From Ostrea edulis (taxonomy: Eukaryota), in the NCBI RefSeq assembly GCF_947568905.1, contig NC_079167.1, positions 75,392,001-75,456,000 of the forward strand: a DNA stretch of 64,000 nt. Direction: 5' to 3'. Below the pieces are notes generated by a model, which saw only the letters and a program-made list of their open reading frames with translations, was not told where the DNA came from and did no database searches. This document shows, piece after piece, positions 31,380-64,000 of this stretch (position 1 is the first letter of the stretch; every line of letters begins with the position of its first letter). The translations under genes and the position numbers were made by a program.

Positions 31380-31581
31380 AACTGAGAAATATTGTACAGT
31401 CCAACAGGAATGTATACATGTGTAAAAGGCATCTCAAAATGTCTTCACTGAAAAAGGTGCAAAATAATTTTACAAAGAATGTCCAGCACTGTTAATACTG
31501 AGAAGTGGTCTTCCCAAAGTATAAAAGAGTTCCTACACAAGCAAGTCATCATTTATAGTCCTAGAATGAGTTGGGAACACT

Positions 31582-37500: not shown

Positions 37501-38373
37501 TCAGTATGTTCAATACACTTACTTTTCATCTTTGTGTTGTACAGGATTGAATTCATTTTTAGCTTCACCCTGTTCAAACAAGAACAAGTGGCCTGTGTCA
37601 GTGCCAACTACAACTCTCTCATCAGATACCCATGCATGACACAGATAGTTATGTGACTCCATCTTCTGGAAGTTAAGGAATGGCTTCAGAGCTCCTTCAT
37701 GGTATCTGAAGTGTTTAAAAATTCCATTTCCAACAACACAGAGCTGTGTGTTATCCTGAGGATTGAAGCTTACCTGAAAGGGTGAAACAAAAAAGTTATA
37801 TCGTGAATATCAAGAGAAATACTGATTCAAAATAGTCTCCGTAACTCTATCAGAGAAAATACTACTGGCTTACTTAACTAATACTACTGGTATACTTACT
37901 TGGTAGACTGGTGCATTGGTGTTAGGGTTTGACGTCTTCTGAACAGCCATTACTTTACTTTTCTCCCATGTCCAGTACAGCAGTGTGTAATCAGGTTTTC
38001 CTCCCTGTGCCACCAGATATTTGGAGTCTGGTGAAAAAGCCAAGCTGACATACTCATTTGATTTGACGAACTCTGATGAGCTTAGAACTTTTCTCTTTCG
38101 AAGACTATGCAGATCATAGATGGTTATTACAGGTTTCTCCCCCTTTTCTGCAATGGCAACATATCTGCGATTTGGGCTGACAGTCAGTGCTGTCATTCCC
38201 TCACTCCCTGATGTTCCAGCAATGAATTTCTGTGATTTCTGGTCAATGTTGAACAGGATGCAATTGGCTCCAGCAGGATACACAATCGTTTGTTCATCAT
38301 GGTAGCAAATGTTGCCAGACACACCTTGTTTTAGGCCAAAGATGTGCCTAGCCATTGCTACGGCAATAGACAT
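31582..38373 (-). CDS. CFAP57: Cilia- and flagella-associated protein 57 (WDR65), about 1219 aa, 19 coding exons
   Basis: Exons (minus): 38373-37900, 37773-37523, 37311-37146, 36896-36744, 36547-36402, 36220-36055, 35851-35519, 35396-35223, 35043-34882, 34679-34524, 34320-34227, 34109-33919, 33735-33562, 33443-33285, 33174-33031, 32923-32807, 32716-32585, 32163-32020, 31905-31582; all GT-AG, sum 3660 nt. Near-identical to vertebrate CFAP57 peptides such as [17 protein letters not shown], [20 protein letters not shown], [54 protein letters not shown]. Confidence 0.97.
32170..32520. repeat. Degenerate gaaaatgacaattact repeats in a CFAP57 intron
   Basis: Repeated atgaaaatgacaa(t/c)tac motifs. 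Confidence 0.7.
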
Positions 38374-38758
38374 CTTGAATGTTTTTGTTAGCCCTCTCTG
38401 AAACTGAGCAACAAAAGAGTTGTATATAGGGAAAATGTTTACCAAAAAATAAATAATGCAATTTCCTATATATAAAAAAAAATTAGAACATACGCATTAA
38501 GAAATGCTTCTTTGTAATAAGAAAACACAGTAAAAGAAATATATACATTTAACAAAACGATTTGCTCAATACGAAAGATCCCCTAGTCACCAGTGAAATC
38601 CGTGAAGAGTCAAGTAAAAAATCCTGTAAAAACTGTATACTGAAATCTTATTTGAAATGACATTGATAAAAGTCATTGATTTGAACTGCCTGGACCAAAT
38701 CTAGACATTGCAAATTAGTGTAAACAACAATCATATAAAAAAAATAATAAAGAGTTAC

Positions 38759-45140: not shown

Positions 45141-48100
45141 CTAGCTCCGTGCAATATCACTGTTTGGTTCATTTCTCATAATCACAGAAACTCTCCTGTC
45201 TCTCTCAATTTTCTGTCCCATAAACATGGATTCCTTCTCATCCAGTACAGCGTGCTTATAACAGTACCTTGATTTGTCTCTGAAATACAGATGAAATATG
45301 TTTACAACATGAAGCCCACGGGCCACAATGATGCACATGTTCAAATGTTTATTCTTACTGTGAACCTACACCGAGCCAGTGACAATACGAACAAATTCGA
45401 ATGCACTGTACTCACTACATAATGTTGTTGGCACGTTCATTGCAGTCTTGTTCTTCAAAATGTTTTTAAACTTTTCATAACAGTCGTATGCAAAACTTGC
45501 AACCCAATTAATTGTGACTGAATTAAGAATCCTGAATCACTACATAACAAACACTACACTAACCCTTTCCTATGAAAAAATCAAAAATCATCACAGTTCT
45601 TTTTCCCTTGAAAACAAAACTACTTTTGCAATATGCAATCAATGGAGAAAAAATTTAGCTTGTAGAGTGTCTGCAAGCTTTATCTATGAAGCCCCATAGT
45701 GACCTTAACCTTTTCACCCCAAAAGCAATAGGATTCTCCCTCTTATAAACAAAGCTACATTTGAACCCAACCAGCGGATGAAATTTGATGTAAATTAACT
45801 GAGTCTATTACATTTCACTATATCTTAATGGTATCCCCTTGGTAGGAGTACATAAGCCTTTCACTTCACCACTTTTGTGCTGTGTTTGATGGAATTTTAT
45901 CCAATAGGTCCAGAAACAATTTAATTAAAATTAGATGTTAGATCTGCTCGCGTACTCGCATACATAACATCTTATGTATGCGAGTACGCGAGCGGATCTA
46001 ACATCTAATTTGTGCGAGCGGATCTAATATCTAATTAGATTGGTCCAGAAAAGAATTTGAAAGAAGTAAAACTTAAAGCAAATGACAAACAATGACTGAA
46101 AAGCTTATCTATGCCTTCTGGCTCCTGGGAGTTAATATTTTGTGTGAGAAAAAGTGAGTTTGGATCAATACATGTAAAGTTTTACCTCATGATATATAAG
46201 GATCTTCTGCTGAGTAAAATGTCGGCCCTTCTCGAATCATCTTCTTCATGTGTAAGTCTCATCACAGCTGTCGACAACAGTGATAGGCCAGCTATTGTGT
46301 TACCACAGAACTAAAATGGGGACAAAACATTTGGTGAACAAAACTATACTTGATAAACGTCTTTTATGCACATGTACTAGTATTTGTATTTAGAAGTAAA
46401 TATTGTTAATGTTAAAGTGCATATATTGACACACACAGCATTTCAATTCCTAACAATTCACACTTTAAAATTTTGGTTCATTATTCACTATCTGTTCAGT
46501 TTTGTATATGTGAAAATTTTCATGGGACTTTAGTTTTATCTCATCGTATATTCTCCATTAATTTGCATGACTTTATTCAAGCAAGCACTTGAAACATTTA
46601 GAAATGTCTGTGATACTTAATCAAGTCTGGTAAATAATTACAAGAATTTTATTTGCGCAAGTAAAATAACATTTACGTATGTCCTACTGCAGTGAAAAAT
46701 CTAGGCATTAGATTGGATGACAAGCTGGGAATATGAGGCCATGTACCCTGCCAAGAATAGATGGGATACAAGATAGCGTCGATAGATCTTTATAAGTAAC
46801 TGCTTCATAAAATGAACATTGTTTTCTGCAGTAGGACATTTTCGTTTTATGTATTCTTGGCAGGGTATTTGGACTCACTTTCCCTGACAAAGTATTATTC
46901 TCCCCCATCTATTGGCTTGGGAGAACATTCCTTTGACAAGGAATGTGAGTCCATACACTCTGCCACAAATCCATAAAACTAATTTCGGGCAGTATTTTTT
47001 TTTTTTTTTTACTTTTTATATAGTCATAAACATATTTCAACTTACTCTGACTGCATCAATATGCGGTTTTATTACTCCACTTTTTTCGAGATCAAGAATG
47101 TGTACATAGGCTAGCTTTGAGACTGTGGGAGGGAAGGCAATGTTCGACACTCGCTTTAGAATGCTGCTGTTCTCTGAATTCCACTGTCGTCTTTCTGTTT
47201 CCCTATATCCGTGTATAGCCTGCATGATAAAACAGTCAGGATCAGTTACAGAATTTCTATGCATTTAACCTGACGTGAAAATATGTATAAATGGATGTGC
47301 TTTTTTTTCTAAGAAAAATAAATGAGCACATTATTTATGTCAAACTTTAAACACTAATTATGTATTTTAAATATAGGGTTTGCACCCTTACTGTACCCTA
47401 GGTAATGATTTTATTGTTTAAAGGTGAAGATTGTTAAAGCAAACATTCTGATTAATTCTAAAGCAATAAATGATACAAACACCTTCAGAAAATGAATTTT
47501 TACATGAAAGACACAATTCTTGTAAAATTGCATCAAGGTCAAAACTTGACCCGAGAGGAAGTTTCATAATTTGAAAGCATAACACAAAAAGCATAGAAAA
47601 AAAGATTTAGGCAAAGGACCATAACTCTAGTAATGGGGGAGCATCTGTTTTTGATCATGAAAAAGAAGTCACATCAAATCATATCATAGCAAAAAAATGA
47701 ATGTTATATAAAAGCCATAACTTTTATATTACAAGAAATGTTTTAGAATCATATATGTCCCTGTGTGGCAATATTGAAAAAGATCTACTTTAATCTAGGG
47801 TGTCTGTAATGATGGTGAAAAATATGGGTTATCTGCTAGTCAAGGGCAACCACAATATTAAGTCTGATCTCTATCAGGGGTTCTAGAGATAATAGCGGTA
47901 TTTTTATATCCAGAGTGATTTGAGATTCAAAATGAAAAGGAGTTATAATTCCATAAGAGATCTTGACCATTGCAGTCATCTACTCTTTAGGGGGTACCAG
48001 TGTACCTGGTTTGATATCTGTCACGCAAAGGGTTCACAAGATATTGAGTAGACAATACATTAATATGACCAGAAAGTAGAAAATTTATGGCTGAACTAGG

Positions 48101-48983
48101 AATCAAACCTGGGACCCCTGCCTCACTAGTCCTAGGTGCCTCTAACCGCTGAGCTACCCAGGTCGATATCCAGTCCTTATAACCCTAATTACTACATTCC
48201 TCCCTCTTAATTTGTCTTTGCCCTTGAAGACACGTACAACCCACGTTGTTTTCGCCCCTAGCAGGACAACCTGCAGTTCAGGGGTGGTCTCGGCACCTGA
48301 CTAGTGAGGCAGGGGTCCCGGGTATATAGGAGAGGAGAAAATCTGTGGCTGGACCGGGAATTGAACCTGGGACCCCTGCACTCCTAGTCAGGTGCTCTAA
48401 CCACTGAGCTACCCAGGCCAATATCCACAGTCCGTATAGCCCTAATTACTACATTAACATGACAATATATATATATATAATTAATTGATACCTATAAGAT
48501 AATGAATAATAGATCATTTTGGGGTCTTTGTGGACTCAATTTACATAGGTGTTATGTACAGGTAAGTGTATAGCCTGAAGAAATAATAAAAGAGCCGAAA
48601 CAGGGGTGGGGTGGGGTCGAGTTATAGTATATATCCATATGATAAACGTATAAATGCAACAAAACAAATCCATGTGCACTAACATCATCCCAGTGGTCTC
48701 GTTCATATCTTAAACGCCTCATATACGGATTCAGTTCATTCATCAAAGAACGTTCCTCATCTTCGGTAATGAAGTCATTGTACACAATAAAACTATCAAT
48801 AAGATCACTAAATGCATTGCGGTCGCTAGCATCAAGCCATTTCGGACTTTCTTCTACAGACGGGATCATGTTGGAGGCAAACCTGAAAATGTCATGTTTT
48901 GTAATCAATGTATTCATTTTCCAGATAGGTCTATGATTTGAAATTCTCCTTAATACACACGTTTTTAGGCTTAAATTATGCAT
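45141..48983 (-). CDS. ALKBH7: Alpha-ketoglutarate-dependent dioxygenase alkB homolog 7, mitochondrial; exons 48983-48684, 47219-47046, 46310-46186, 45279-45141; 245 aa
   Basis: RYERDHWDD|AIHGYRETE, VHILDLEKSGVIKPHIDAVR|FCGNTIAGLSLLS, SLYIMR, HAVL, RRVSVIMR match ALKBH7; HxD...H and Arg ligands intact; 738 nt total. Start ATG choice less certain. Confidence 0.93.
45929..46010. repeat. 82-nt palindrome (39-bp arms, 4-nt loop) in ALKBH7 intron 3
   Basis: aattagatgttagatctgctcgcgtactcgcatacataa-catc-ttatgtatgcgagtacgcgagcggatctaacatctaatt; a single T/G mismatch. Confidence 0.95.
48089..48454 (-). repeat. Tandem (258-bp period) tRNA-Thr(AGT)-like pseudogene heads with an inverted partial copy
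   Basis: Two minus-strand heads (gctcagtggttagagcacctgactag...ggttcaattccc) at 48089 and 48347; plus-strand partial at about 48293-48324; related head at 10385-10437. Confidence 0.6.
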
Positions 48984-51710
48984 TTTCACTAAGTAATTGC
49001 AAAAATACAAAACAAGGTTAGACAACATATACAGTTCCGGTTTGACAGACACATATTAGTTCGTTCGTTCATTGTAACTTCAAAATAATATTTCTCAAAG
49101 GTTTTATCAAAAGCCTATATCAAAGCTATGGAAATATCATGAGTTAAAGCTGTTGCTTCATAATAATGAAGATATTTTACAAATTTTGAAATAGTAAAAA
49201 AAAAATGTACAAATTAGCCTATTTCATTGAAGAAAAAAAATCTGGATTCGCAGTGCGCTTTTTACAATGGAAAAACAAATGTGTGTTGTCAAAGTAAATT
49301 TTGTTTATGGTTGACCCAGGAACCAGTTGGGACTGTTTGCATTTACTGAGTTAGTAGATCTATCTACAGAATATGTTTGTGCTCCATGGAATTGTTCAAA
49401 GATGATCTGACCAGGTACCTGGTGTATTGGTATGTACATAAGTTTCTACTGTGTTGCTACACAATATTACACACAGGTCTACCAAACTTAAAGGATTCTA
49501 TCAAAACAGTTCATATAGACACTGATACTTAGATGTGTAGTATGTTCAGCAACAAGCATAATGAAATCTCTCCACCCATTTCCTTTGAAAGGCTTATGGA
49601 AAGAAATAGCTGAATTATAACAGATTTTAAGCTTGACTTAGCAGTTCAGCGTGGGCTGACCTTACAACATGGTTTGGTTTGAATGTTATATTTTGGTTAA
49701 CAGACAATCTTGAGGGATCTCGCCGAGTTTACATGGGTATAACGGTTATGTCAATCTTGATAGAATGTTCAATCATTAGGATAAAGGGTAGAACCCCACG
49801 TGCATGTGTTTGCAATATGTAGCAAAATGTATTTTTGGGTCAATGAAATGATTTTTTTAAAAACATTTTATAATAAATACCTTTAAACCGTTGTGCTATA
49901 CATTAAGCAGTCTCTGACAACTTGTTATGCAAATGTTTTTTTAAAAAAAAAAAAAAAAACAATTTTTCTATCAGTTTAGTAATGAGCTGACTTTTTGTAT
50001 GTCTCCGTAAATTAACGAGTTGCAAATCAAGTTTGAGCTTCATGTTGCTAGACCTGTTCTACAATTCTTTTACAAATAGTGATTGCCGTTTGACTTTGAA
50101 AATTATTCACTGTGTATTCCAAACTTTTTATCTATTAAATGTGCTTGCAGATAATGAGTATATTGGTAGTGTGTACCTTTCTTCAGTTGAAGATTAAGTT
50201 TCACTTGCTTATTTTGGTATACTTTTATCAAGGCTTATTGCCAATGGACTGGAAAAAATTAATCAAGCCAGGAAATTATTCTTTTTTTTTCCCCATTAAA
50301 CGTTCCATGAATTAATAAAAAGTGTTTTTTTTTTGTTTTTTTTTTATCTATTTGTCACAAAGTGTGTCAAATGAACTGTGTTGCAAAAACATAATTTAGA
50401 TTTCGTTAATACAAAATGTCATTTTATTGTCAACTTGGTTTGGATATCTTTTAAAAGTAAATAAAATATCAATATAAAATCTTTTTTGATAAAGTAAGTC
50501 AATGTGTTTCTTTCTGCATGTCAAACAATGTCAATTTGCAAGTAGTTTCCTGGATATTATATATACAAGCAACGAAATAACATGAAATAATAAGAATTGC
50601 ATTATATTTAATAACTCCCTGAATACTGGGTGATGAAACTGTGTGAGAAACTTACTGAGCAGATTCACTTTTGCAATGATAAAGATTTGTCCCACTCCCG
50701 CTTGTAAACAAAGTGTTTTGTGCCTTATTATGTACAAGAGTTCTCCAAAGGGAAATAACTTGTACGTATCTCGAAACCGGTGTATTCAATTCTCTTGACA
50801 TCTTATCAAAACAAAAGCAGTACATCATATGCATGAAATATTATATATATTCTATTTTCGTTTGATTTGCCCCTAGTATTATTTTGACATCCTTGGACCT
50901 CCAGATATTTCAAATTTGTGTGTCAGCAGGGCATTTTTGTCACACTGACCCACTCACCTGTCTAGTTTCCAATAGATTCTATTGAGAGTACCTGGGCTTT
51001 TGCTGGGCCATAACAGTCCACAGTGTGAATGCCAGGGACGAAACTTGGGATTACTTTAACTCAAATGGGTAGGGCTGGTTTTTGGGAGAGGGTCCCAATC
51101 CCATTAGATTCATTGATTGTGAATTTTATTGGAATATTTTGTTCAGATTAGGAATTCTTTAATCAATATATAATCACCCAAGTTTTTGTTTTTTTCTTAG
51201 ACTCTCACTCATTCTGTAATGACCCCTTCTCCCCCTCAAACTACATGTAGTTAATGTTGTAAACTTTCTTTCTTTTTTGAATTTCCTTCTTTATAAAATG
51301 TCTTACTGTTATGCCCTCTGGGCCCAAAATTGGAATAAACTTATTTAATCTTATCTTATTTTATGTAGTCTAGGCATCTCTGTATTTTTCTGTATTCTGA
51401 CAAAAGGTGATTATTTGAGAAATGCATCCTACTTACATTGTCTCAGTATTGGGAATTTGTGAACCATGAATTGGGAAAAGTTTTCTTATTTTCCAATTGA
51501 GAAGGGACCTTTAATCGGACCCATTTTAAGGAGATCGATGACCCTGGTGTGGTAACTAGATAATTGTGATGTCACATGATTACAGACAATGATGGACTTC
51601 TAAGTTCTACTACCAGAAATGTAAATGAATGTGCACTTCTAGAATGAAGTGCATAGAATTTGAAAAAATATGTAATAAAAAGGTGATTAATTGAATGTTG
51701 GGTAACATAC

Positions 51711-52145: not shown

Positions 52146-53086
52146 TAACATACCCGCCCTCAGTCATCAAGCAGAATTGTCCCTCGCAAGCTCGGAAAGT
52201 TTTACCATGCAATGATCTGATATTTCCCAATATTCAGTCAGTAACATACTAGTACTAGTATTATCACAGTCTTTAATTTTAATATTCTAGTGTGTTCTCA
52301 GAAAATTATCTAAAATCATTGATCTGACATTTGTCATATGACATGTCTTGGCTGTTTGCCAACATGATGATGTCAATAGATTAAAAAGAATTAATTAATA
52401 ACAGTAATAAGTAAATTTTTCATGGAAATTTTCAAAGGAAAACAATAAAAAGTACATGTTCATTAGATTCAATGTATGCTTTACATTTTAATCAATTTCA
52501 GTGGCTAAATTTAGTACCAAGTTGTATTTTCTCAAAGAGTTACTGAAAGAAACATAATTAAAGCAATTTTATTTTAAGACCTCAAATAATTAGGTTTTGT
52601 TGTAGTTATATAGTCCAACGTTGCAACATTTCAAAGAATGAGTGATTTAAAGAGGTCACTGAGCTGTGAAATTGGCAGACTATTTAATGATCTTACTTTT
52701 ATGCAGAAAAGTCAGACTATTTGTTTTACTATTTGGTATGAAGAAAGCATGAAATATTAAATGATTTTTGAAGTGCTTTGAATGTTTGGGGCAAAATTAT
52801 TCCTTTGAATAAACTGAGTGTTGATTCTTTAGTGTTTTCAATTGACAACAGAAGGGTATATTGATTTGAATTTATTTTACATGTACTGACATTTTTGAAC
52901 ACACTGAAAGATTTGTCCAAGTATCATAAATTGAACGACTGATTAATTATGGATCTGTTCATTTTCAGATTCATTATGGAGGAACCAATGACACTTCAAA
53001 GGGAATACAAAAGTAGACTGGTTGGTTGAATTATGTAATGGAATCAGGATAGTTTGAACATTAAGAATGAATGTGCCAAATGTAAA

Positions 53087-54444
53087 ATGAAATTTCATTC
53101 TGTGCATGGAAAATTTATAACTCTTTCGGAGAGTAAAACAGTTGGCACGAGATCTGACACAGCCTACTGTCATGGAATAGTGTTCAGTGACCAACCTCTG
53201 AAGGTCACCCAAAAGGTGTCATTTGAGGTCAAAACTACAGATGCTTGGAGTGGGGGAATCAGAATTGGGGTGACTTCTTTTGACCCTGGAAAGCTGTCAA
53301 GTTCAGACCTACCCAAGTATGCCATTCCAAGTTTGTCCAAGAGAGAGGGATTTTGGATGTGTCCAATAAGTGAAGGAATAATCTCGTCAGGCAGCCGGGT
53401 CACTGTGTACATAAACAACAGGGGTCAGCTGCAGTTTTTTGTCAACAGTCTCTACAAAGGAGCGTGTCTCAGAGGACTTCCTATCGGAAAGCCTCTATGG
53501 CTGTGCCTTGATCTTTACGGAAACACCAAAAGTGCCAAGTTCATTAAAGCAGGTAAATGGGTTGTAGTGTGGAGTTTATTTCTGTCTGAGCGTTAGGTTT
53601 GCTGGAGAGATATTGATTGAGATGTTAATTACCTGACTTGATGCACAAATCAATGTCAGTTTAATGATACCAAGTTTTACTAACAGTTTCAATAATTCAG
53701 TGTTTCTCACTCATTCATATAATACTGTCCATTCTTTATTTTACTCGAGTACTTAATATCGCGAAATGACTCCAAGATGCCAAACTGCAAGAACACGAAT
53801 TTGTAAGTGGTCTGTTGGTCAAGAGCTTTTACATGTATTTCAGCAATATGAAATTAAAAGGGAGGAATTTTTTTTGGCGAGTGATTTGAGGTCGAGGGGG
53901 TACTCAGAACTCTTGGCCGCTGGTTGCATAGCAAGTATACATAGTAATCCCCAAAAGCTTAGATATTGTGTATAGATTTGAATTAAGATTTTATTTAGCT
54001 TGTAAAACACCTTAGCTGTTAACACCCCCCCCCCAAAAAAAACCCCAAAAAATCACCTGAGTAGGGGAGAATATTGATATTCAAATTTAAGAAAGAACTG
54101 TATGTTCACTTATTTTAGCAGGATTCATATTATAGTATTTTTTGTGGTGAAGCGAGAGTGTTGATTTATATACACAGAAGCTATTACGTCAAGATGATTC
54201 AAATTGCACAAACTCATTTATGTAACAAATCTTAAGTATGGTACACATTTAATAGATACACTTAGTCACTTACTATATGCTGCAAATGGATCAGATATTT
54301 TACTCAAGCACATATGACCCGGACTTTATTAATAATTATGTGACAAAACAACCATATTTCTGGTTTATCATTTTTGATTTTTTTTAGCTCACCTGAGCTG
54401 ATAGCTCAAGTGATGAACTATTCTGATTACCCATTGTCCCGTCA

Positions 54445-54478
<34 letters not shown>

Positions 54479-57400
54479 TACTTCTTCTCCAGAACCACTG
54501 ATCCAATTTCAACCAGACTTAGTAAAAAACATCCTTGGGTGAAATGGATTCAAGTTTGTTCAAATGAAGGGCAACACCCTCCTCCAAGGGGAGATAATAA
54601 TGAAAATGTATAGTATGGTGGGGTTATTTTAAAATCTTCTCAAGAATCACTTAGCCAGGAAAGTTGAAATTTACATGAAAGCTTCCTGACATAGTGCAAA
54701 TTAAATTTTTCCTGAACTATTCAGGTGTCCGGGTAACGCAGAGGTAGCACAGAGGTAGCACTCTCGCTTCTCACCACTGCGACCCGAGTTCAATCCCCGT
54801 GATGGCAGTGGTTGTATGTGAGAGGGTATGGCGGTTGCCCACATGGGTTTCCTCCGGGTACTACGGTTTCCTCCCACATAAAAGACCCCCTAGCGCAAAC
54901 ATCCATGCATCAAAGGACCCCATTGGAAATAAGCTTTTGAGCTTTCATGGGTTATCCTTGGTATTTGTATGTATGTGTATACCAAATAAACATTTATTTA
55001 TTCAAGGTAGGGCTTTCATATTTTGTATATATAGATTCTTTATGGCAAGACCTTATTGACATATTCAATATCTCCTGAACTATTCTAGGTGTATCTTTCA
55101 TATTTTGTATAGATTTCTTATGGCAAAACCTTTTATTTTATACTATGACCTTTGACTTTGAAAATTGACCCACTTTTAAGGAAATGTAACCTGTTAGACA
55201 TCTTCAGAACTATTGAGGATGGGGCCTTTATATTTTCAGGCTTTCAAGCGGGCCCTTATTTTCCTTATTTTTCTACAACAGCCCTTATTTTCCTTATTTG
55301 AGCTTTAGAATCTTAAAAAAGCCCTAATTTTTTGTTGAAATTCCTACATTTCCAAATTTTGAAAGTTTAAATAAATTTGACATAAAGTAAGTGTTGGAAT
55401 TTATTAAATTTTGTCTTAGTATACTTTCAGAAAATGAATATGTTGATTAAATGTACATCTCAGAAGACATCTTGTTGGTTATCAGTTATATTCGGCATTG
55501 ATTGTAAGCCATGGGAGTCCACCTGAATTATATCATGGTTTGTGCTGAATGCCGAATATGGCTGTTGATGACCACTGGTATGACCTTCTGAGTGGATAAT
55601 TAGTTTTTGTATTATTGCCCCCTGCAAATGGTGAGTAAAACATTTTTTCTTTCCTATTGATTTGTAAATTTAACCCTTATTTTTGTCTAAAAAGCCCTTA
55701 AAAATCCTATAAAAGGACAAGATTTTTGATAATTTTGCCCTAAAAATGGCCCTTATTTTTTGCAAAGTGTCACTTGAAAGCCTGTATTTTGTATATAGTT
55801 TTTTTATGACGAGACCTTGTTATAGTCATATTTAATTTTGTAACCTTGACCTATTTTCTTTAAAAACCTTACCAAATCAACATCTCTTGAACTATTTAAG
55901 GTGAAGCTTTTTCATTTTGTATATAGATTTTTTGGGGCATGACCTTGATGTACTTCAGTGTTTGACCTTGTGACCTTGACCTTAAAGTTTGACCTACTTT
56001 CACTAAAAATCCTACCTATTATGCAATATCTCCTGAACTATTTAAGTTGGAACTTTCATATTCTGCATGTAGATTTCTGAAGTCAAGGCCTTCATATCAT
56101 ACCATAATCTATTACCTTGTGACCTTGATCTTATCCAGATTGCAGCAAGATCATGTTAGTCATATTGGTGTTGAGGCATCTCTGTGTTATATGAATTCAA
56201 TTTCAATTAGGCCAAGTAAAATTAATTAGTAGATTATGATTCCCGCCCGCCCCTCGAAAATCGCCCCACCCCGTTTTTTTTTATTTTTCAAAATTACGAT
56301 TTCCGGATATTTTTATGTCCGGTCTGGTATCGTAAACGTACTTTGTTTCACTTTGCCTTTTAGAAACCCAAATACACATGTAATTATGATTTATAAAGCC
56401 TTTTCTCAATGAGAGAAGGCATTTTCGAGGTCAAGAATACCATGGCGAAAAATAAAAAATAAAATCCTCCCACCCGCCCCATTTTTTTGTGAAGTTTGAA
56501 TGATAATCTACTAATTAATTTTACTTGGCCTTATGTTGTGATTCTTTAGGACTAGGTTGGGGCCGCAATATAGGGTAAAAAAAATTCATGGGAATCACAA
56601 AAGCTGAACAATGGCAGGGTCAAAGTGACTCAGATGAGCGATGTGGCCCATGGGTCTCTTGTCAGGATGTGGTGTTCTACAGTAATTTCAACAAATTTCT
56701 TTTTCATTTTGCTGAAACAAGAGTTATCCCTGCTTGAAAATTTAAAAAAAAAAACACTAGTTAACTCTGACCCTGTTCTCTTCCCTCCTCAACAGCAACC
56801 CCCTCTCCCTCATTCATAAAAACAGTTCATTTTTACTTGAAATGGTCCTCACAAATGCACAGGGGGGGGGGGGGGGGGGGGGGGGAAGAAGGCCTTATAT
56901 CAAAACTTTTCCTGCAGTTGATTTTTATCACAAAAAAGTGAATTTCAACCCTGATTTTGCCTAATGTAGAATAACTATTCAAAAACATTTGTTCCCAACA
57001 TTAGAAAATTACATTGTGATTGAAAAGTTTTGCAAACATTCATACAAGATAAACATTTCATTTTACATCCTTCTGGAACAGAAACCACTGTTCGGGTAGT
57101 GCAGAGGTAGTGCTCTCGCTTCTCACTGCTACGACCCGAGTTTGATCCCCGTGATCAGCAGTGGTTGTATGTGAGAGGGTATGGCGGGCGCCCATTTGGA
57201 CACGTGGGTTTCTTCCGGGTACTCCGGTTTCCCCCCTAGCACAAACATCCATGTATCAAAGGACTCCATTGGAAATAAGCTTTCAAGCTTTTATGGCTTA
57301 TCTTTGGTATTTATGTATGTTTGTATGTATGTATATACCGAATATTAAACATTTTTTTATTTTATAGAAATTGCCATTATGAGGTTTTGATGCGAGACTT

Positions 57401-59154
57401 TTTGCTTTGGTATTCACTTTGTGTTTACATTTATCCATTTCTGTACCAAATACGTACATAAATCAAAATACTGAACACATGTATATATATAAATACCATT
57501 TGGTGATCATGTATCAAATCCGTTACCATGGTTATGGAAGAATTCCAGATACATGACTACAAGGTCTGTAGATATTACATAGAGTCATAAAACAAAACAG
57601 TGAATTCAGTTCTCATATTCTGTTTAAAAATGGAATTAGATGGGAATAAAAACAAAATTTGTCTCATGTTATTAGGAGCTGATTTAAAAATTTAAAACTG
57701 ACATCAGAAGTGTTTGATAACGCACTTTCCCTGTTTGTATTTTGTGTGTGTATTCTAATCTCTGCAATACATTCAAGTACATGTACATTTTTATAGGTGG
57801 AATAAATTTGTGTGCTCTCACTTGTCTATCAAGTTCAATATAGTGTTTCAAGAAGGAAAAGTAAGGTGTATCGAATGGCACATGCTTGTATATACCTACA
57901 TCTCAACCTTGTACACAATGCCAGTCACTTACACGCCATAAAACAAGGATTACTATGGATATTTATAAAGAGATTGATTTGCATTTCATGACCAGATGAA
58001 AACTGGGTGTAATCTAACTGCAAATTGTGTTTCATACATGTCATGCACAATAAAGGTTTATTTCCAGTCAAAGCACTGAAAGGAGCTCAAGCGGTACAAT
58101 GTAAATTTTAGATTTCAACTGATCCTTTCAATCGCTCATTGAACCAAACAACCTTGTTGCAGCACAGTCGTAATGGAAAATCTTGGATGGTGATGTAAAT
58201 TGCTAATTGATATTGGACAAAATGTTGGCTACAGAAGAAAAAACCAAAGATGCGAAGTTAAAAAAAAATCTATGTTCGGATTCAAATTAGTATTCAGCAT
58301 GCAATAATAACAAGTCACGTTCAAGGTGTTCATTATAGATATACCTGTATGTGGAATTGAAGGTGTAAAATAGGTGAGGAAATATCAAAGTTATCTGTGT
58401 GGGATATCAACAGGAGAACAGAAATATAGCCCTATTGGAAGGGCTGTGGATTATCCAATATTAATGACATAGTTGTGAACTTGCTTATCTCGCGCAGACC
58501 GTATTAGGTCGGGGTGCTAAATCTAATTGGGACCATGGTAGTTTTCCTTGGATGATGAGTATGTATAAATTTTGTCTCTTTAATGGTGAAACTATGAAAC
58601 ATTTGTAGGAGAGCATTTATGTAACCATGTTAAATTTGTTAACTAAAGAGCTTACGTTATAGATTGTTTTCTCACCTGAACTAAAAACTCGAGTCACGAT
58701 TCATGAAATTTACTGAAAGGTATTCTGTCTAGCTGAACTTCATTTATTCTGAAATGCAAATCAAAAGGTACTTATGATATCTGCATTTGAGAATTTACCT
58801 TTGGAACAATTTTATTTGTTGCTTGTCAATAGTTTCAGAATCTAATTTGTTGCGTTCAAGCAGTTAGAGGTAATGTTTGCTACAAAAAGTAATTAGGGAA
58901 TTTGCAGAAAATGGAAACCAGTACATAGGAGTCCCTTGATATTGTTGATAGGGAGATGTATATCTTGATTAACAGGAAGGTTGTAAGATAGTTCAACATC
59001 AATAATAAAATTTGAAATTGGAATTACAACAGACATTTCTTTTTATGGTTTTCCACTGTTCATGTATGTATTTCAGCAATGTTTGGTCATTTTTGCTTCT
59101 CTCTCTCTCACTGCTCTTTCTCTCTCTCTTGCTGCTCTCTTTCTCTCTCTTGCT

Positions 59155-59213
<59 letters not shown>

Positions 59214-60105
59214 AACACACATTTATTATTTAAAAACTATTCGATACATTTTTTTTTTAGATTTTACTTTGACAGTTAACTTGTACCTAGGCCATCTTTA
59301 TACAAAGGTTGAATTTTTGCAGCATAATAAACAGAGATTTTATGTGAAATCAATAACAGAAGTGATAGCAGAAATTTGCCCTCGGAAATATAAATATTTT
59401 GTCTAAGAGGCCGTCATTAATAAACCGTGGTATCTCCAAAGTGGATCATATGCACTTCTTACTAGGATTTCATAGGTAGACTCGGGACAGAAATACATGA
59501 GATAAAACAAATCAATAGTATAAATGAATTAGGGCTGGAGTTGGTGATTTGTCAGTGTATGGTCTCATCTTGTGACGTAGTGTTTCGGAAAGGGTGCACA
59601 CGATAGGAGATTAAAGAGTTATACCACCACAAACTGCAATTTAGGATATGAAAGACTATGCTGTTTAACTCGTTTAACTGTAAGAAATTATTATCTTTAA
59701 AAATATGTATAAGAAATGGAATGTATAGGTAATAAAAGCAGGTTTCCGATGACTATGTTTATGTTGTGTTTGGTTGTATTTATTTTTGTTGAAGTCTAGT
59801 GGTTGTTTGTTATCTCTGTGGTTAAATTTATATCTCATGTGTCTCATCAAATGAAATATTAACTGTGAAGAGAATTACAAGCACAATGAATAATTAATGA
59901 CAAGGAAGATAAATGTGAGAGTGTGAATTGGCTTTGTTTCAGATGAGGCTCCTAAGGAGATTCTGGCTCGTGGACCAGAAGCAGTGCATGCTTACGAGGA
60001 GGCGTGCATATCTGGTAAACAACCAGTATACAGAACCAGATTAATGCTGGTGGGCCAGGATCGGGTGGGCAAAACCAGTCTGAAGAGGGCCTTAACCAGA
60101 CAAAA
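53087..60105 (+). CDS. NHR (Neuralized homology repeat) plus Roc GTPase (ROCO-like) protein, 3'-incomplete; coding exons 53087-53552 and 59943-60105
   Basis: Exon A: KFHSVHGKFITLS...AYCHGIVFSDQPL...WSGGIRIGVT...PLWLCLDLYG (NHR hallmarks). Exon B: APKEILARGPEAVHAY...RTRLMLVGQDRVGKTSLKRAL (pre-Roc helix plus P-loop GxxxxGKTS). Donor GCAG|gtaaat (phase 1) and acceptor gtttcag|AT join in frame. Confidence 0.75.
54727..55000 (+). mobile_element. tRNA-derived SINE with V-domain-like core
   Basis: tRNA head, core ggtttcctccgggtactacggtttcctcccac (V-SINE-like), AATAAA tail; second copy at 57091-57358. Confidence 0.75.
55237..55784. mobile_element. MITE with perfect 12-bp TIR caggctttcaag and 6-bp TSD tatttt
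   Basis: TIRs and flanking direct repeats; internal gcccttatttt repeats. Confidence 0.8.
56209..56531. mobile_element. MITE with perfect 29-bp TIR aggccaagtaaaattaattagtagattat
   Basis: TIRs match exactly; flanks TTAA-like but imperfect. Confidence 0.8.
57091..57358 (+). mobile_element. Second V-like SINE copy
   Basis: Aligns by eye to 54727-55000. Confidence 0.75.
59099..59210. repeat. (CT)n microsatellite
   Basis: Interrupted then pure CT run. Confidence 0.95.
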
Positions 60106-60157
60106 GTATGTATAACAGGAAATCCAAATAGATATGTCGAGGAAAACTTAAAAAGGG

Positions 60158-60297
60158 TGTTGACAGGGGATTCTTGCTCCTCCTAGATACCTGATCCCAC
60201 CTATGGTATATCCAGGGGTCCGTGTTTGCCCAACTATCTATTCTGTATTGCTTATAGGAGTTCTGAGATTGATCACTGTTCGTTATCTTCACCTTAC
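60158..60297 (-). mobile_element. Partial copy of the 23951 repeat family
   Basis: Reverse complement matches 23955-23990 plus 24154-24262. Confidence 0.75.
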
Positions 60298-62049
60298 ATG
60301 TTTTTATATTACGGAGAGCAAGATAGATGGTGCTTTAGTGTCTACATGCATGGTAGCATCAACTGAGCTTTTTGTATTCAAGGTAAAATCAGAGAAATAA
60401 AAATCTAATTTTACATTGAAAATTTAGAACTGTTTGTACACTACTTACATTTTATGAGACTTTATTTTTAAATCTGTGATTTTGCCGTGACAGATTCTTC
60501 AGCAAGACATTAAATTAAAGGGAGTGGTCATTTCTTAACTATGTATATGTATGTATTCTTTTTGATGAAAACCGTATTTTTGCATGAAGGCACCCTTGTG
60601 AATTCTTGTAAATAAGAAATAATTTACAGTGATGTCCCTTAACTTTGGTATAGACTTATTGTCTTGAAGGAAATGTCTAATCACTGTAATACTTCCTGTG
60701 CTGAAGGTAAATAATGAGAGAGAGTACACGTCATTATGATGGTAATGAAATTCCACTTGAGGGTGGATAGGTTGCTTTGTTTACCTTGCTCTTGTCATCG
60801 ATGATTCGTTTTGCAGTATTTATTCGGGCACTTGGGAAGTAGGGGGGAGAAGGTCTTGAATACAACTTGTAGAATAGTCCGAAATATCTGACGTTTTCCT
60901 GGCTTTTTTATGATTTTGATATTTACCATTTCCTGGCACGGTAAATTTCAATATCATAAATCATAAAAAAGGCCAGGAAAACATCAGATATTTCAGACTA
61001 CTTGTAGAATTGAGTTTATTGATATAGATTCTTGAGTCAGATAAATAGATAAATGTTTAAATAGTATAATGAACTATGCTAAAAATTGACATTTCAAAAA
61101 GTCAGAAGAGTAAAATACAATTTTGTCTATTCTCATGACCATTTTCAACAGCTTAACGTACATGATAGGTCAGCCTGACAGATCATTCCACTAGTGTGTC
61201 ACATGTTGGGTGGTGATGTAAATGGGGCCGGGAGCCAGCTTTAGGAGTGTAATCTGCTCGGCCTTTGACAGTATGTTATGCCCTTATTGGCTGTTAGAAT
61301 GGTTGAAAACCACATAGATTTATGGGAATCTATGTTTGATGAGTGGTTTTCGATTTAATTTTCTTCATTCTATTGGGTTGTACGTAGGTTAAGTTGACTT
61401 CATTCCTGTAGCTAATGCTATTTAACAATTTGTTGGAGCAATATTGTTACAACAATGTCTTCGAAATGTGTGAATTGTGAAGTCATGTGTGGCAACATGT
61501 CACACACTAGTAAACCATATGATAAAAAAAATTGCATACTGAGTATCAGAGATTTTACATTTTATTTTCAAACCAGAGCAAAAATGTCTTGGGTGTCAGT
61601 CTTTTAAAGTCGTCAGTGGAATGAATTGTTATACATTCATTTACAGTCTGTTGTGTTTGTGAATGGGGTAATTTATAAGAAAAACACATCGAGCAATGCG
61701 TGAAAAATTTTTCATGGACCCTCTGTATTTCCTTATCACGTATTACCCGTTATCGCTGGCCAAAAAGCGTATTTTGAAAAATGGATATTTGGACATTGTG
61801 TTTTGATATGCATTGCCTTTAATTGTATATAAAAATAACATGTCCATTTGAATGACAAGGTTTTAAAAATCTTCAATGCTTAGCAATGAATTGAATTTTC
61901 ACCATCTTAGCAAGAAAGAGTTACTATTCTTGTATATTTGAGAGTTCCTTTACTTACAATACTCATGTAATTAATGTAAAAATATCTCGTAAAGAATATT
62001 TGAAAATTTTATAACATGATTAAAATAATTTCATCAATAATCATGCTTC

Positions 62050-62362
62050 ATTTTAAAAACAATACATGAACAAGACATATACACGGCATTTCAAAACCTT
62101 GTCCAATATCAGTATTAGTGCACGTACTGCATGGCTGTTTCCTGGTAGGTGAGCCGTCATTAACTGGACCAGGGTCAACAAGAATTTCAGCCTTTGCAGC
62201 CAAAATATCACCTTTGTCCTCCTTTTTATGGACTCTTCCCATAAGACGGTAAAATGATTGGCAATTTCCTGTTGTGTAGAATTTGGATGGTTTCTGTGGT
62301 ACATAATAATTTTGCTTATTTTCTTCAAAGTTGAACAGAAACCTGTTTCGAGGCAAAGCCAT
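62050..62362 (-). mobile_element. Frameshifted pogo/Tigger-type transposase N-terminal (CENP-B-like HTH) remnant
   Basis: Joining two frames gives MALPRNRF...SKIIMYHRNHPNSTQQEIANHFTVLWEESIKRRT/GDILAAK, resembling the first HTH of Tigger/pogo proteins; no catalytic domain or TIRs seen. Confidence 0.55.
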
Positions 62363-63064
62363 AGCTAAACTGCAATATTTTTCTATGATGTAAAACGCAA
62401 GACTACAGTTCATATCAAGTAATTTTCTTGTTATGTAATACAGCAATTATTGGGATCCTGTCTGCCCAGGTGTACTCTGGAAGTCGATAATGACCAATTT
62501 ACCACTTCACTGACCATGTACACCAGTGTCGGTTTATCAAGATAATTAACAATTTGAAATAGACTTTTGTAATTAAACGTGGTGGCAAATGGCAATTGCA
62601 AATTTGGCATTTTAATGAGAATTTTAAGTAATAGGAAAAACGTTCTTAGAAAAATTTGACATTATAACGATAATGGCAATGATGAATTGAGTGGCTGTAA
62701 TTTGGGAGTTAACTATACCTCTTAATTAAAATATTGAAAGCAAAATGTAATGCATATTAAAAAAAACCCACAGCAGTTTACCCAGTCAGAAAGAAAAGGC
62801 ATACCATATCATTGTGAAGAGTCAAATTCGTGATAATTTATATGTATAAATGACATCATATTATTAATATAAACGATATGATACACTATATAGTGTCAGG
62901 GATGAAATGAATTTGATCATGTAACATGATGGGTAACTAATAGTGTGAATACCTCTAGAACATGATACTGCATTAAAAATAAAGCAATTAATATTCATGT
63001 CACTAGATGTGTGATATTGATATCAATGACGCCCTGCATAGATAAGGCTTAAAAGCTATTATAC

Positions 63065-64000
63065 TGTCAGTAGTAAGGAATCTGCCACGTGGCAGTGTGT
63101 GTCAGTAGTAAGGAATCTGTCACGTGGCAGTGTGTGTCAGTAGTAAGGAATCTGTCAGGTGGCAGTGTGTGTCAGTAGTAAGGAATCTGTCACGTGGCAG
63201 TGTGTGTCAGTAGTAAGGAATCTGTCACGTGGCAGTGTGTCAGTAGTAAGGAATCTGTCACGTGGCAGTGTGTCAGTAGTAAGGAATCTGTCACGTGGCA
63301 GTGTGTCAGTAGTAAGGAATCTGTCACGTGGCAGTGTGTGTCAGTAGTAAGGAATCTGTCACGTGGCAGTGTGTCAGTAGTAAGGAATCTGTCATGTGGC
63401 AGTGTGTCAGTCGTAAGGAATCTGTCACGTGGCAGTGTGTGTCAGTAGTAAGGAATCTGTCACGTGGCAGTGTGTCAGTAGTAAGGAATCTGTCACATGG
63501 CAGTGTGTGTCAGTAGTAAGGAATCTGTCACGTGGCAGTGTGTCAGTAGTAAGGAATCTGTCACGTGGCAGTGTGTGTCAGTAGTAAGGAATCTGTCACG
63601 TGGCAGTGTGTGTCAGTAGTAAGGAATCTGTCACGTGTCAGTGTGTGTCAGTAGTAAGGAATCTGTCACAGGGCAGTGTGTCAGTAGTAAGGAATCTGTC
63701 ACGTGGCAGTGTGTGTCAGTAGTAAGGAATCTGTCACGTGGCAGTGTGTGTCAGTAGTAAGGAATCTGTCACGTAGTAAGGAATCTGTCACGTGGCAGTG
63801 TGTGTCAGTAGTAAGGAATCTGTCACATGGCAGTGTGTGTCAGTAGTAAGGAATCTGTCACGTGGCAGTGTGTGTCAGTAGTAAGGAATCTGTCACGTGG
63901 CAGTGTGTGTCAGTAGTAAGGAATCTGTCACGTGGCAGTGTGTGTCAGTAGTAAGGAATCTGTCACGTGGCAGTGTGTGTCAGTAGTAAGGAATCTGTCA
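63065..64000. repeat. 33/35-bp minisatellite, about 27 copies, running off the window end
   Basis: Unit gtcagtagtaaggaatctgtcacgtggcagtgt(gt). Confidence 0.95.

What the first reader, a model, noticed from the sequence alone, without database searches (positions are those of the whole stretch)
53087..60105. NHR-Roc fusion: a ROCO GTPase with a Neuralized substrate-binding domain in place of LRRs
Seen: a full NHR domain exon splices in phase 1 directly onto an exon encoding the PxEIxxRG...Y helix and the Roc P-loop (RLMLVGQDRVGKTSL), with only a few linker residues. Known: NHRs are peptide-binding modules of Neuralized/NEURL proteins, and human ROCO proteins (LRRK1/2, MFHAS1, DAPK1) use LRR, ANK or kinase N-termini, not NHR. 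Inference: an exon-shuffled invertebrate ROCO sensor or adaptor (possibly immune, possibly with COR and Death domains downstream) whose architecture I do not recognise as characterised.
Basis: partly seen in the sequence, partly recalled or inferred. Interest (0 to 1): 0.75.

Follow-up and report, generated by a model that had tools for sequence, protein, structure and literature searches.

The report
Oyster switch protein with Neuralized head
The two exons are real and are spliced together: they open an already annotated flat-oyster gene for a large, unstudied switch protein that most invertebrate groups share, which joins a peptide-binding head, an LRRK2-like GTP switch, a death domain and a SARM1-like tail.

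Summary
Window 53087-53552 encodes a complete Neuralized homology repeat (NHR; Pfam E 1.6e-37). It ends in phase 1 and joins 59943-60105, which encodes a ROCO-type pre-Roc helix and the Roc P-loop.

These are coding exons 1 and 2 of 22 in Ostrea edulis LOC125669862. RefSeq already annotates this junction (isoform X1, 1275 aa). The other 20 exons lie beyond the window.

The whole protein reads NHR, Roc (with a ~180-residue disordered insert), COR-A/B, a Cys/His-rich motif, Death, a SARM1-like TIR and a C-terminal CaaX box.

A spliced transcript contig from a related oyster, and RNA-like contigs matching this locus at about 99%, support the splice. A second isoform starts at an alternative exon (58411-58558) and lacks the NHR.

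This is not an oyster novelty. It is a largely one-per-species family found in molluscs, annelids, nemerteans, brachiopods, a flatworm, chelicerates, a centipede, echinoderms, hemichordates and amphioxus. The exon 1 and exon 2 boundaries are the same in a hemichordate.

The family is catalogued ("neuralized PATS1"; one Aplysia figure), but I found no functional study.

My proposed mechanism is inferred, not shown: a membrane-anchored, GTP-gated TIR effector or adaptor that the NHR targets or controls.

The parts
53002..53552 (+). First exon of isoform X1. The 5' UTR reaches back at least to 53002. The coding part, 53087-53552, holds the whole NHR (Neuralized homology repeat) domain. The exon ends in phase 1.
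   Evidence: Pfam Neuralized E 1.6e-37. 100% identical to XP_056019781.1 residues 1-155. The related-oyster transcript contig L002 aligns continuously over 53002-53552. Exon chain.
53553..59942 (+). Intron 1 (6390 nt; gtaaat...tttcag). It is rich in high-copy repeats and holds a (TC)n microsatellite at 59098-59210.
   Evidence: Exon chain. The RNA-like runs X1 and X2 have zero depth on its unique parts, while the DNA run X5 has about 6x. Tandem repeats.
58411..58558 (+). Alternative first exon 1b, used by isoform X2. Its ATG is at 58552. It contributes only Met-Met plus one base before splicing to exon 2, so the product lacks the NHR.
   Evidence: XP_056019782.1 begins MMNEAPKEI. ATGATGA|gt is found at 58552-58560. 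One 433-nt contig of run X2 joins 58411-58558 directly to 59943-60105 (record 15).
59943..60105 (+). Coding exon 2 (163 nt, enters in phase 1 and leaves in phase 2). It encodes the ROCO-type pre-Roc helix (APKEILARGPEAVHAY) and the Roc G1 P-loop (GQDRVGKT).
   Evidence: 100% identical to XP_056019781.1 residues 156-210. 56-78% identity to the same segment in the eight bivalve, gastropod, cephalopod, nemertean, centipede, tick and amphioxus relatives, and 39% in the spider. Aligns end to end with M. barkeri Roco2 residues 12-61. Contigs in X1 and X2 end exactly at its borders.
60106..64000 (+). First 3.9 kb of intron 2. The next coding exon would lie at window-equivalent 66494, outside the window. 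The intron contains a 35-nt tandem array from 63065 to the window end.
   Evidence: Exon chain on L001. Tandem Repeats Finder. No coding ORF seen.

Best explanation
Shown: window 53087-60105 holds the first two coding exons of Ostrea edulis LOC125669862. Its long isoform (1275 aa) has these parts in order:
- NHR, residues 3-152.
- A short ROCO-type linker helix.
- Roc GTPase: G1 at 193-200, switch-I TVGID, a ~180-residue disordered insert, G3 DFSGQ at 413-417, and an LRRK-like G4 'THRN'.
- COR-A and COR-B.
- A conserved Cys/His-rich motif at about 873-913.
- Death domain, 964-1038.
- A SARM1/bacterial-type TIR, 1050-1159, with the catalytic-position Glu invariant across the family.
- A C-terminal C-a-a-L box.

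The gene is one member of a largely one-per-species family spread across Bilateria. An alternative first exon gives an isoform without the NHR.

Inferred mechanism:
- The protein is geranylgeranylated and sits on a membrane (about 0.6).
- The Roc-COR module acts as a nucleotide-dependent dimerisation or conformation switch, as in LRRK2 and bacterial Roco (about 0.6).
- The NHR, a short-peptide-binding module in Neuralized, recruits a partner or folds back on Roc to gate that switch (about 0.4).
- Switching clusters the Death and TIR domains, which then signal by NAD+ cleavage like SARM1 (about 0.35) or by scaffolding like MyD88 (about 0.3).
- The NHR-less isoform would be an ungated or differently targeted form.
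For: Identity and splice:
- establish the exons and the gene.
- The intronless 4058-nt contig L002 (85% identical protein) aligns to the window as two abutting blocks, 53002-53552 and 59940-60109.
- X1 and X2 hold 50% of the NHR-exon words but only 6% of the 7-kb span. They have no depth on unique intron.
- X1 record 8 covers 59940-60105 and runs 485 nt further 5'. The NHR exon is 466 nt and ends in CAG, which explains the three extra matched bases.

ROCO nature:
- Pfam gives Roc 61.3 bits and COR-A 65.3 bits.
- Sequence hits to M. barkeri Roco2, C. tepidum Roco and LRRK2.
- The predicted structure matches LRRK1 (E 1.9e-21), CtRoco, LRRK2 and the COR-only structure 3dpt (TM 0.74). Its NHR matches 4kg0 (TM 0.94).

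TIR:
- The best sequence and fold matches are bacterial NADase TIRs and SARM1/TIR-1. MyD88 ranks only 44th.
- The invariant Glu aligns with the Glu of SARM1's WVHKE.

CaaX: 56 of 62 family sequences end in C-a-a-L/I, with a second Cys 2-3 residues upstream.

Family age:
- Taxa are listed.
- Saccoglossus has the same exon 1 phase and the same 163-nt exon 2.
- The tree follows the species phylogeny.

A link between NHR domains and a Roc domain in trans is reported for human LRRK2 Roc and NEURL4 (PMC4565672 abstract).
Against: - No biochemical datum exists for any member. I found none in 8.4 million papers.
- The NHR-to-exon-2 joint in O. edulis itself was not read directly. The 6-kb limit on read laying kept the two exons from being laid together, and X1 and X2 are only guessed to be RNA.
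- The G4 guanine-specificity Asp is not conserved (THR followed by N, D, S, K, G, A or E), so nucleotide preference is uncertain.
- The catalytic-position Glu is also present in non-enzymatic TLR TIR domains (my own knowledge), so it does not prove NADase activity.
- Strict one-to-one conservation fits a core cellular role better than a fast-evolving immune sensor.
- Only exons 1 and 2 lie in the window. Everything downstream rests on the public chromosome record and its gene model.
Confidence: 0.75

Rival explanations
1. The protein is a MyD88-like scaffold. The Death-TIR half acts purely as an adaptor in Toll-like receptor signalling, with no enzymatic TIR activity, and the ROCO half regulates assembly.
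For: Death followed by TIR is the MyD88 domain order. The Aplysia immunome study files a ROCO-containing Death+TIR protein (LOC101861518) among five MyD88-like genes. Molluscs have large TLR repertoires (same paper).
Against: The TIR is closest in sequence and fold to SARM1/TIR-1 and bacterial NADase TIRs. MyD88 TIR is absent from the sequence hits at E<0.1 and ranks 44th by fold. The Death domain's best sequence matches are NRADD and p75NTR, not MyD88.
Confidence: 0.3
2. The protein is a membrane-trafficking or Notch-ligand regulator. The NHR binds tails of Delta-like or Crumbs-complex proteins, as in Neuralized. The LRRK-like Roc-COR works on endosomal membranes. Death and TIR are secondary interaction modules.
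For: The NHR is most similar to Drosophila Neuralized NHR1 (E 4e-28; fold TM 0.94). LRRK2 Roc, NEURL4 and Notch/endosome are linked in PMC4565672. A single-copy, slowly evolving bilaterian gene fits a cell-biological role. The predicted prenyl anchor fits too.
Against: There is no RING or other E3 module. The invariant SARM1-type TIR features and the Death domain point to death or immune-type signalling. No ligand motif was tested.
Confidence: 0.15
3. The NHR-containing form is a minor isoform, and the main product starts at exon 1b and lacks the NHR. On this view the 'NHR-Roc fusion' is of little functional weight in oysters.
For: RefSeq lists NHR-less isoforms in O. edulis and C. virginica. 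A contig in run X2 joins exon 1b to exon 2.
Against: The NHR has been at residue 1 of this family since before protostomes and deuterostomes split. Run X1 has no coverage of exon 1b, but it has a contig running 485 nt upstream of exon 2. Both runs hold NHR-exon words. Many intronless transcript contigs in other species carry NHR and Roc together.
Confidence: 0.15
4. These are two separate genes wrongly joined: an NHR-only gene and a downstream GTPase gene.
For: The exons are 6.4 kb apart. Exon 2 alone is below the Roc threshold. An independent first exon exists between them.
Against: A continuous ORF runs across the junction on an intronless contig of a related oyster. The same junction is present in about 50 species. 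The phase is compatible and the intron position is conserved in Saccoglossus.
Confidence: 0.02

Closest known systems
LRRK1 / LRRK2 (human ROCO kinases)
   Same: Roc-COR-A-COR-B tandem. The predicted fold matches LRRK1 8e05 (E 1.9e-21) and LRRK2. The motifs are LRRK-like: TVGID, NIWDF-G and VGTH. LRRK2 Roc is reported to bind the NHR protein NEURL4 in trans (PMC4565672).
   Different: No kinase, WD40, ankyrin, armadillo or LRR domains. The NHR is in cis at the N-terminus. Death, TIR and CaaX sit at the C-terminus. The Roc carries a ~180-residue disordered insert between strands 2 and 3.
Prokaryotic LRR-Roc-COR proteins (M. barkeri Roco2 4wnr, C. tepidum Roco 3dpu/6hlu)
   Same: These are the best sequence matches to the Roc-COR part (E 1.9e-17 and 3.7e-12). 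The exon 2 peptide aligns with the post-LRR helix and P-loop of 4wnr.
   Different: An NHR replaces the LRRs, and eukaryotic Death/TIR effectors are appended.
Neuralized / NEURL1 / NEURL4
   Same: A full NHR domain, closest to Drosophila Neuralized NHR1 (E 4e-28; TM 0.94).
   Different: A single NHR with no RING E3 domain. It is therefore not a Neuralized-type ubiquitin ligase.
SARM1 / C. elegans TIR-1 and bacterial TIR NADases (AbTIR)
   Same: The TIR is closest to these in both sequence and fold. The Glu at the catalytic position and a 'WP' motif after strand D are conserved.
   Different: No ARM or SAM domains. The presumed regulator would be a GTPase rather than an NMN/NAD-sensing ARM domain. 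Enzymatic activity is untested.
MyD88
   Same: Death followed by TIR. The Aplysia relative is filed as MyD88-like (PMC9334734).
   Different: The TIR is not MyD88-like. About 960 residues of NHR-Roc-COR lie upstream, and the protein carries a CaaX box.
Sea-anemone 'novel genes' NG1 (LRR-Roc-COR-TIR_2) and NG3 (kinase-Roc/COR-Death-TIR) (PMC5094078); prokaryotic AP-GTPase conflict systems (PMC8195603)
   Same: Roc-COR is coupled to TIR, or to Death plus TIR, as the effector end. The layout is sensor, NTPase switch, effector.
   Different: The sensor ends differ (LRR or kinase rather than NHR). Those families are lineage-restricted, whereas this one is spread across Bilateria with one gene in most species sampled.

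Membership tests
ROCO proteins | Roc (Ras of complex) GTPase domain above the family threshold | tested here: met
   Pfam Roc 61.3 bits against a cut-off of 27 on the full product P0257. The in-window exon alone scores only 15.5 bits.
ROCO proteins | COR domain immediately C-terminal to Roc (COR-A and COR-B) | tested here: met
   COR-A scores 65.3 bits against a cut-off of 35.3. COR-B is weak by Pfam (19.9 bits, in Saccoglossus only). However, the predicted fold matches the C. tepidum COR-only structure 3dpt at TM 0.74 and RocCOR 3dpu at TM 0.61.
ROCO proteins | Intact G1, G3 and G4 nucleotide-binding motifs | tested here: inconclusive
   G1 GQDRVGKT and G3 D-x-x-G are invariant. G4 reads T-H-R-x, like LRRK T-H-x-D, but the fourth residue varies (N, D, S, K, G, A, E).
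ROCO proteins | GTP binding, GTP hydrolysis and COR-mediated dimerisation | not testable with these tools
   Needs recombinant protein.
Neuralized / NEURL E3 ligases | One or more NHR domains | tested here: met
   PF07177 at E 1.6e-37. Matches 4kg0 and 2yue at E 4e-28.
Neuralized / NEURL E3 ligases | C-terminal RING (NEURL1/1B/3) or SOCS box (NEURL2), or the six-NHR layout of NEURL4 | tested here: not met
   No RING or SOCS hit anywhere in the 1275-aa product, and only one NHR.
MyD88 adaptors | Death domain followed by a TIR domain | tested here: met
   Death 964-1038 and TIR_2 1050-1159.
MyD88 adaptors | TIR orthologous to MyD88 TIR, in a two-domain protein | tested here: not met
   MyD88 is absent from the PDB sequence hits and ranks 44th by fold, behind SARM1, TIR-1 and SPARTA. 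960 extra residues lie upstream.
SARM1-type TIR NADases | TIR with Glu at the catalytic position | tested here: met
   The Glu of C-N-R-E-L is invariant in 40 sequences. It aligns with the Glu of SARM1's WVHKE and of the AbTIR motif. Numbering it as SARM1 E642 rests on my own knowledge and on the title of PDB entry 7cm7.
SARM1-type TIR NADases | ARM-SAM-SAM-TIR architecture and NAD+ cleavage | tested here: not met
   No ARM or SAM domains. Enzymatic activity is not testable here.
CaaX-prenylated proteins | C-terminal Cys-aliphatic-aliphatic-X, where X = Leu directs geranylgeranylation | tested here: met
   O. edulis ends in CNIL. 56 of 62 family sequences end in C-x-x-L/I (55 with Leu), and the six exceptions are truncated models. 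The lipid modification itself is untested.

The most novel reading that the evidence does not exclude
The family is an ancient, membrane-anchored TIR NADase of animals whose on/off state is set by a Roc-COR GTPase, with an NHR domain as the input. If so, it would be a eukaryotic counterpart of the prokaryotic 'sensor, AP-GTPase, TIR' conflict systems. It would also be a natural cis fusion ('Rosetta stone') supporting a direct functional coupling between NHR and Roc domains, of the kind reported in trans for NEURL4 and LRRK2.
Probability: 0.3. Interest if true: 0.75.

Novelty: new variant of a known kind. Interest (0 to 1): 0.5.

Why it matters
ROCO research centres on LRRK2 (Parkinson's disease), and how the N-terminal domains talk to Roc-COR is still debated. 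This family is a ROCO protein conserved across Bilateria, with one gene in most species sampled, in which the input domain is an NHR and the output is a Death plus SARM1-like TIR pair on a predicted lipid anchor.

It gives three things to test:
- Whether NHR domains bind Roc domains directly, as claimed for NEURL4 and LRRK2.
- Whether a small-GTPase switch can gate a TIR enzyme or adaptor in animals.
- What this deeply conserved gene, not found here in vertebrates, insects or nematodes, does in invertebrate cell death or immunity. This includes oysters, where disease matters commercially.

The gene and its architecture are already in public databases. What is added here is the description of the family, not its discovery.

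Tried and rejected
- The word-based protein search with the NHR exon alone returned only genome ORF fragments that run into the intron, because of its length filter. The full-library HMMER search was needed to reach full-length relatives.
- No sequencing run on record as RNA holds the exons. X1 and X2 are only guessed to be RNA.
I laid 54150-60149. This showed the exon 1b to exon 2 joint directly. It showed the NHR to exon 2 joint only indirectly.
- The look-up of isoform X2 by exact sequence found nothing.
- Exon mapping of the spider orthologue failed because its start was not found.
- The Aplysia paper's supplements hold no NHR or IPR006573 entry.
- Searches for locus names and for architecture phrases found only the Aplysia and clam papers.

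Readings considered and rejected:
- The P-loop belongs to a GIMAP, septin or other non-Roc GTPase. Rejected.
- These are two separate genes. Rejected.
- This is a lineage-specific immune-gene expansion. Rejected: one gene in most species sampled, and a tree that tracks the species phylogeny.

I did not inspect the predicted model's inter-domain contacts. No coordinates or PAE are available, so I make no claim that the NHR docks on Roc.


Full report
**1. The observation**

Window 53087-53552 (+) is an open frame of 155 codons plus one base. It begins with the first in-frame ATG after a stop. It matches Pfam Neuralized (PF07177) at E 1.6e-37 over model positions 1-147 of 149. Its closest solved relative is Drosophila Neuralized NHR1 (4kg0 and 2yue, E 4e-28).

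The exon ends in phase 1 at a gtaaat donor. After a 6390-nt intron, an acceptor tttcag precedes 59943-60105 (163 nt).

One caveat applies. Exon 2 alone scores only 15.5 bits against Roc, where the cut-off is 27. The window by itself therefore cannot tell a Roc from another P-loop GTPase. Nothing coding follows up to 64000.

**2. What gene it is**

A full-library HMMER search with the NHR exon found long proteins whose residues 1-153 are the NHR. Pfam finds Neuralized, Roc, COR-A, Death and TIR_2 in all of them.

Searching with their alignment found Ostrea edulis LOC125669862. Isoform X1 (XP_056019781.1, 1275 aa) is 100% identical to the NHR exon at residues 1-155. It is 100% identical to exon 2 at residues 156-210.

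The chromosome record that carries it (OX387707.1 of GCA_947568905.1) is identical to window 43087-64000 over 20,914 bases. An exact GT/GC-AG chain of 22 coding exons on that record reproduces the protein. Exon 3 would lie at window-equivalent 66494, so the window holds only exons 1 and 2. The window contains no N.

**3. Evidence that the splice is real**

(a) A 4058-nt Logan contig (SRR14492796_338, locus L002) carries an uninterrupted ORF of 1273 aa that is 85% identical to isoform X1. The genomic gene has 21 introns, so this contig is a spliced transcript of a related oyster. It aligns to the window as two abutting blocks, 53002-53552 and 59940-60109. It then aligns to every downstream exon in order.

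(b) Runs X1 and X2 hold half of the NHR-exon words but only 6% of the words of the whole 7-kb span. The DNA runs hold 46-75%.

(c) Laid on 54150-60149, X1 and X2 have zero depth on the unique parts of the intron, where DNA run X5 has about 6x. Their contigs stop exactly at the borders of exon 2.
- X2 record 15 joins 58411-58558 directly to 59943-60105.
- X1 record 8 (1324 nt) covers 59940-60105 and continues 485 nt on the 5' side and 673 nt on the 3' side.
- The NHR exon is 466 nt and ends in CAG. That explains the three extra matched bases (59940-59942), which the exon-1b contig lacks.

This is strong but indirect. The 6-kb limit on read laying prevented laying both exons together, and the runs are only guessed to be RNA.

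(d) The same NHR-to-linker-to-P-loop continuity is present in about 50 species.

**4. A second isoform**

XP_056019782.1 (isoform X2, 1122 aa) starts M-M-N-E-A-P-K-E-I. Its first exon ends ATGATGA|gt at 58558, inside intron 1. X2 record 15 shows this joint. Crassostrea virginica also has an annotated NHR-less isoform. The NHR is therefore an optional head, chosen by which first exon is used.

**5. Anatomy of the whole protein**

Pfam on isoform X1 gives:
- Neuralized, residues 3-152.
- Roc in two pieces (P-loop near 188-225, and 400-478).
- COR-A, 573-730.
- Death, 964-1038.
- TIR_2, 1050-1159.

Alignments of 9 and 40 family members show these conserved features:
- An invariant P-loop Gly and Lys.
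- A nearly invariant switch-I T-x-G-I-D.
- A poorly conserved insert of about 180 residues, with pLDDT under 50.
- N-I-W-D-F-x-G (G3) and V-G-T-H-R-x (an LRRK-like G4 whose fourth residue varies).
- A block of conserved Cys and His between COR and Death (C873, C875, C879, H882, C887, C892, H894, C901, C909), which may bind metal.
- In the TIR, invariant W-M-D-x-G...G-D, the Glu of C-x-x-E-L-x-L-A, W-P-P-P-G and G-G-H-G-G.

Of 62 family sequences, 56 end in C-a-a-L/I (55 with Leu) and carry a second Cys two or three residues upstream. The six exceptions are truncated models. By established knowledge of CaaX processing, a terminal Leu directs geranylgeranylation.

**6. Tests of family membership**

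Roc-COR:
- The best solved sequence relatives are M. barkeri Roco2 (4wnr, E 1.9e-17), C. tepidum Roco, and LRRK2 (E about 1e-10). LRRK1 is weak.
- An AlphaFold2 model of residues 1-960, built with a 40-sequence alignment, has mean pLDDT 74.9 and pTM 0.67.
- That model matches LRRK1 (E 1.9e-21), CtRoco LRR-Roc-COR, LRRK2, and the COR-only structure 3dpt (TM 0.74). Its NHR matches 4kg0 at TM 0.94 and rmsd 1.1 Å.
- It is therefore a true ROCO protein.

Linker: the exon 2 peptide alone aligns end to end with residues 12-61 of 4wnr. That stretch is the P-P-x-E-I-V-x-Q-G-x-E-A-V-x-x-Y helix, which follows the LRRs of that archaeal protein, plus its P-loop (E 0.0012). The oyster protein thus keeps the post-LRR linker without the LRRs.

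TIR:
- Sequence search gives bacterial NADase TIRs (7uxr, AbTIR) and SARM1 (E about 1e-5), and no MyD88.
- The fold search of the Death-TIR model (pLDDT 76.5) puts C. elegans TIR-1 and human SARM1 first. MyD88 is 44th.
- The invariant Glu aligns with the Glu in SARM1's W-V-H-K-E. This is the catalytic E642, by my own knowledge and by the title of PDB entry 7cm7.

Other modules:
- The Death domain's best matches are NRADD and p75NTR.
- There is no RING, so it is not a Neuralized-type ligase.

**7. Distribution and age**

Members with the full architecture occur in these groups:
- Bivalves, gastropods, cephalopods and a chiton.
- Annelids, a nemertean, a brachiopod and the flatworm Macrostomum.
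- A spider, a tick and a centipede.
- Echinoderms, hemichordates and amphioxus.

None was listed from vertebrates, insects, nematodes or cnidarians. That search scored only the 8000 candidates sharing the most words, so absence is provisional.

Most species show one gene. A maximum-likelihood tree of 40 members recovers arthropods, deuterostomes (amphioxus, and hemichordates with echinoderms) and lophotrochozoans. Oysters fall inside the pteriomorph bivalves.

In Saccoglossus, exon 1 (460 nt) also ends in phase 1 right after the NHR, and exon 2 is again exactly 163 nt. More distant mollusc genome fragments all break at the same place. The fusion therefore predates the protostome-deuterostome split. 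It is not an oyster or 'invertebrate immune' innovation.

**8. What is already known**

- The Saccoglossus RefSeq record NP_001161599.1 (GenBank ACY92584.1) is named 'neuralized PATS1'.
- A hard-clam RNA-seq study lists a 'neuralized pats1' transcript as strongly down-regulated in QPX lesions (PMC4769524).
- The Aplysia immunome paper draws TIR-plus-COR proteins whose legend includes NHR, ROC, COR, Death and TIR. It files a ROCO-containing Death+TIR gene as MyD88-like (PMC9334734).
- Sea anemones have LRR-Roc-COR-TIR_2 and kinase-Roc/COR-Death-TIR genes (PMC5094078).
- Roc-COR ('AP-GTPase') proteins with variable effector ends are described as prokaryotic conflict systems (PMC8195603).
- Human LRRK2 is reported to bind the six-NHR protein NEURL4 through its Roc domain (PMC4565672 abstract).

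I found no functional study of this family.

**9. How it most likely works**

Everything in this section is inferred. The layout is input (NHR), nucleotide switch (Roc-COR), assembly and output (Death, TIR), and anchor (CaaX). My proposal is as follows:
- A geranylgeranyl anchor holds the protein on a membrane.
- Roc-COR cycles between nucleotide states that change its dimerisation or conformation, as in characterised Roco proteins.
- The NHR either recruits a short linear motif of a partner or binds the protein's own Roc to hold it off.
- Release lets the Death and TIR domains cluster.
- The SARM1-like TIR then cleaves NAD+, or nucleates TIR/Death partners.
- The NHR-less isoform would escape NHR control.

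Strict one-to-one conservation argues for a core cell-death or stress pathway rather than a diversifying pathogen receptor.

**10. Verdict**

The claims of novelty and of recent exon shuffling are overstated.

The gene model is public and the architecture has been noticed. The family is nevertheless uncharacterised. The features assembled here are its spread across Bilateria, the conserved intron, the retained post-LRR linker, the SARM1-type TIR with its catalytic-position Glu, the conserved CaaX box and the alternative NHR-less start. Together they make it a reasonable target for experiment.

Noticed in passing
window 63065-64000 (runs off the window end): A 35-nt tandem array with consensus TGTCAGTAGTAAGGAATCTGTCACGTGGCAGTGTG. 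It has at least 27 copies at 94-98% match and lies inside intron 2 of the gene. Its ORFs in several frames are artefacts of the repeat.
   Followed up: partly
window 54350-54750 and 56550-56750 (intron 1): Very high-copy repeats. The summed contig depth is in the tens of thousands in both the RNA-like runs and the DNA run, with many internal joints. Similar short ORFs recur at 54701-54877 and 57058-57252. These are probably SINE or MITE-type elements that are also transcribed elsewhere in the genome.
   Followed up: no
window 45141-49028, minus strand: The upstream neighbour is a 260-aa gene with a 2OG-Fe(II) oxygenase domain (PF13532). From its sequence I judge it AlkB-homologue-like. It runs head to head with the ROCO gene, which leaves about 4 kb for the ROCO promoter.
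   Followed up: no
window 31500-38500 minus strand; 28355-28786 and 39223-41908 plus strand: There are other genes in the window. One is a WD40-repeat, cilia/flagella-type gene on the minus strand. One is an exon coding Sel1-like repeats. One is a small basic coiled-coil protein that resembles a mitochondrial ribosomal or CRIF1-type protein. These were named by eye from the ORF translations only.
   Followed up: no
P0257 residues about 873-913 (outside the window; L001 exons 16-17): Conserved Cys/His pattern between COR-B and the Death domain: C-x-C-x3-C-x2-H-x4-C-x4-C-x-H...C...C...H-R-R. The model there is confident (pLDDT about 85-90) with small strands. This may be a zinc-binding module that no Pfam family describes.
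   Followed up: partly
P0257 residues about 1160-1172 (outside the window): An invariant glycine-rich motif, G-V-G-G-H-G-G-(S/T)-G, is inserted in the TIR domain just before its last helix. It is modelled at low confidence and has no counterpart in the aligned SARM1 sequence. It is unexplained.
   Followed up: no
window 60040: Contigs of runs X1 and X2 read G where the genome has A. This changes AGA to AGG, both Arg, so it is a synonymous difference. It is either a polymorphism or a very close relative's allele.
   Followed up: no
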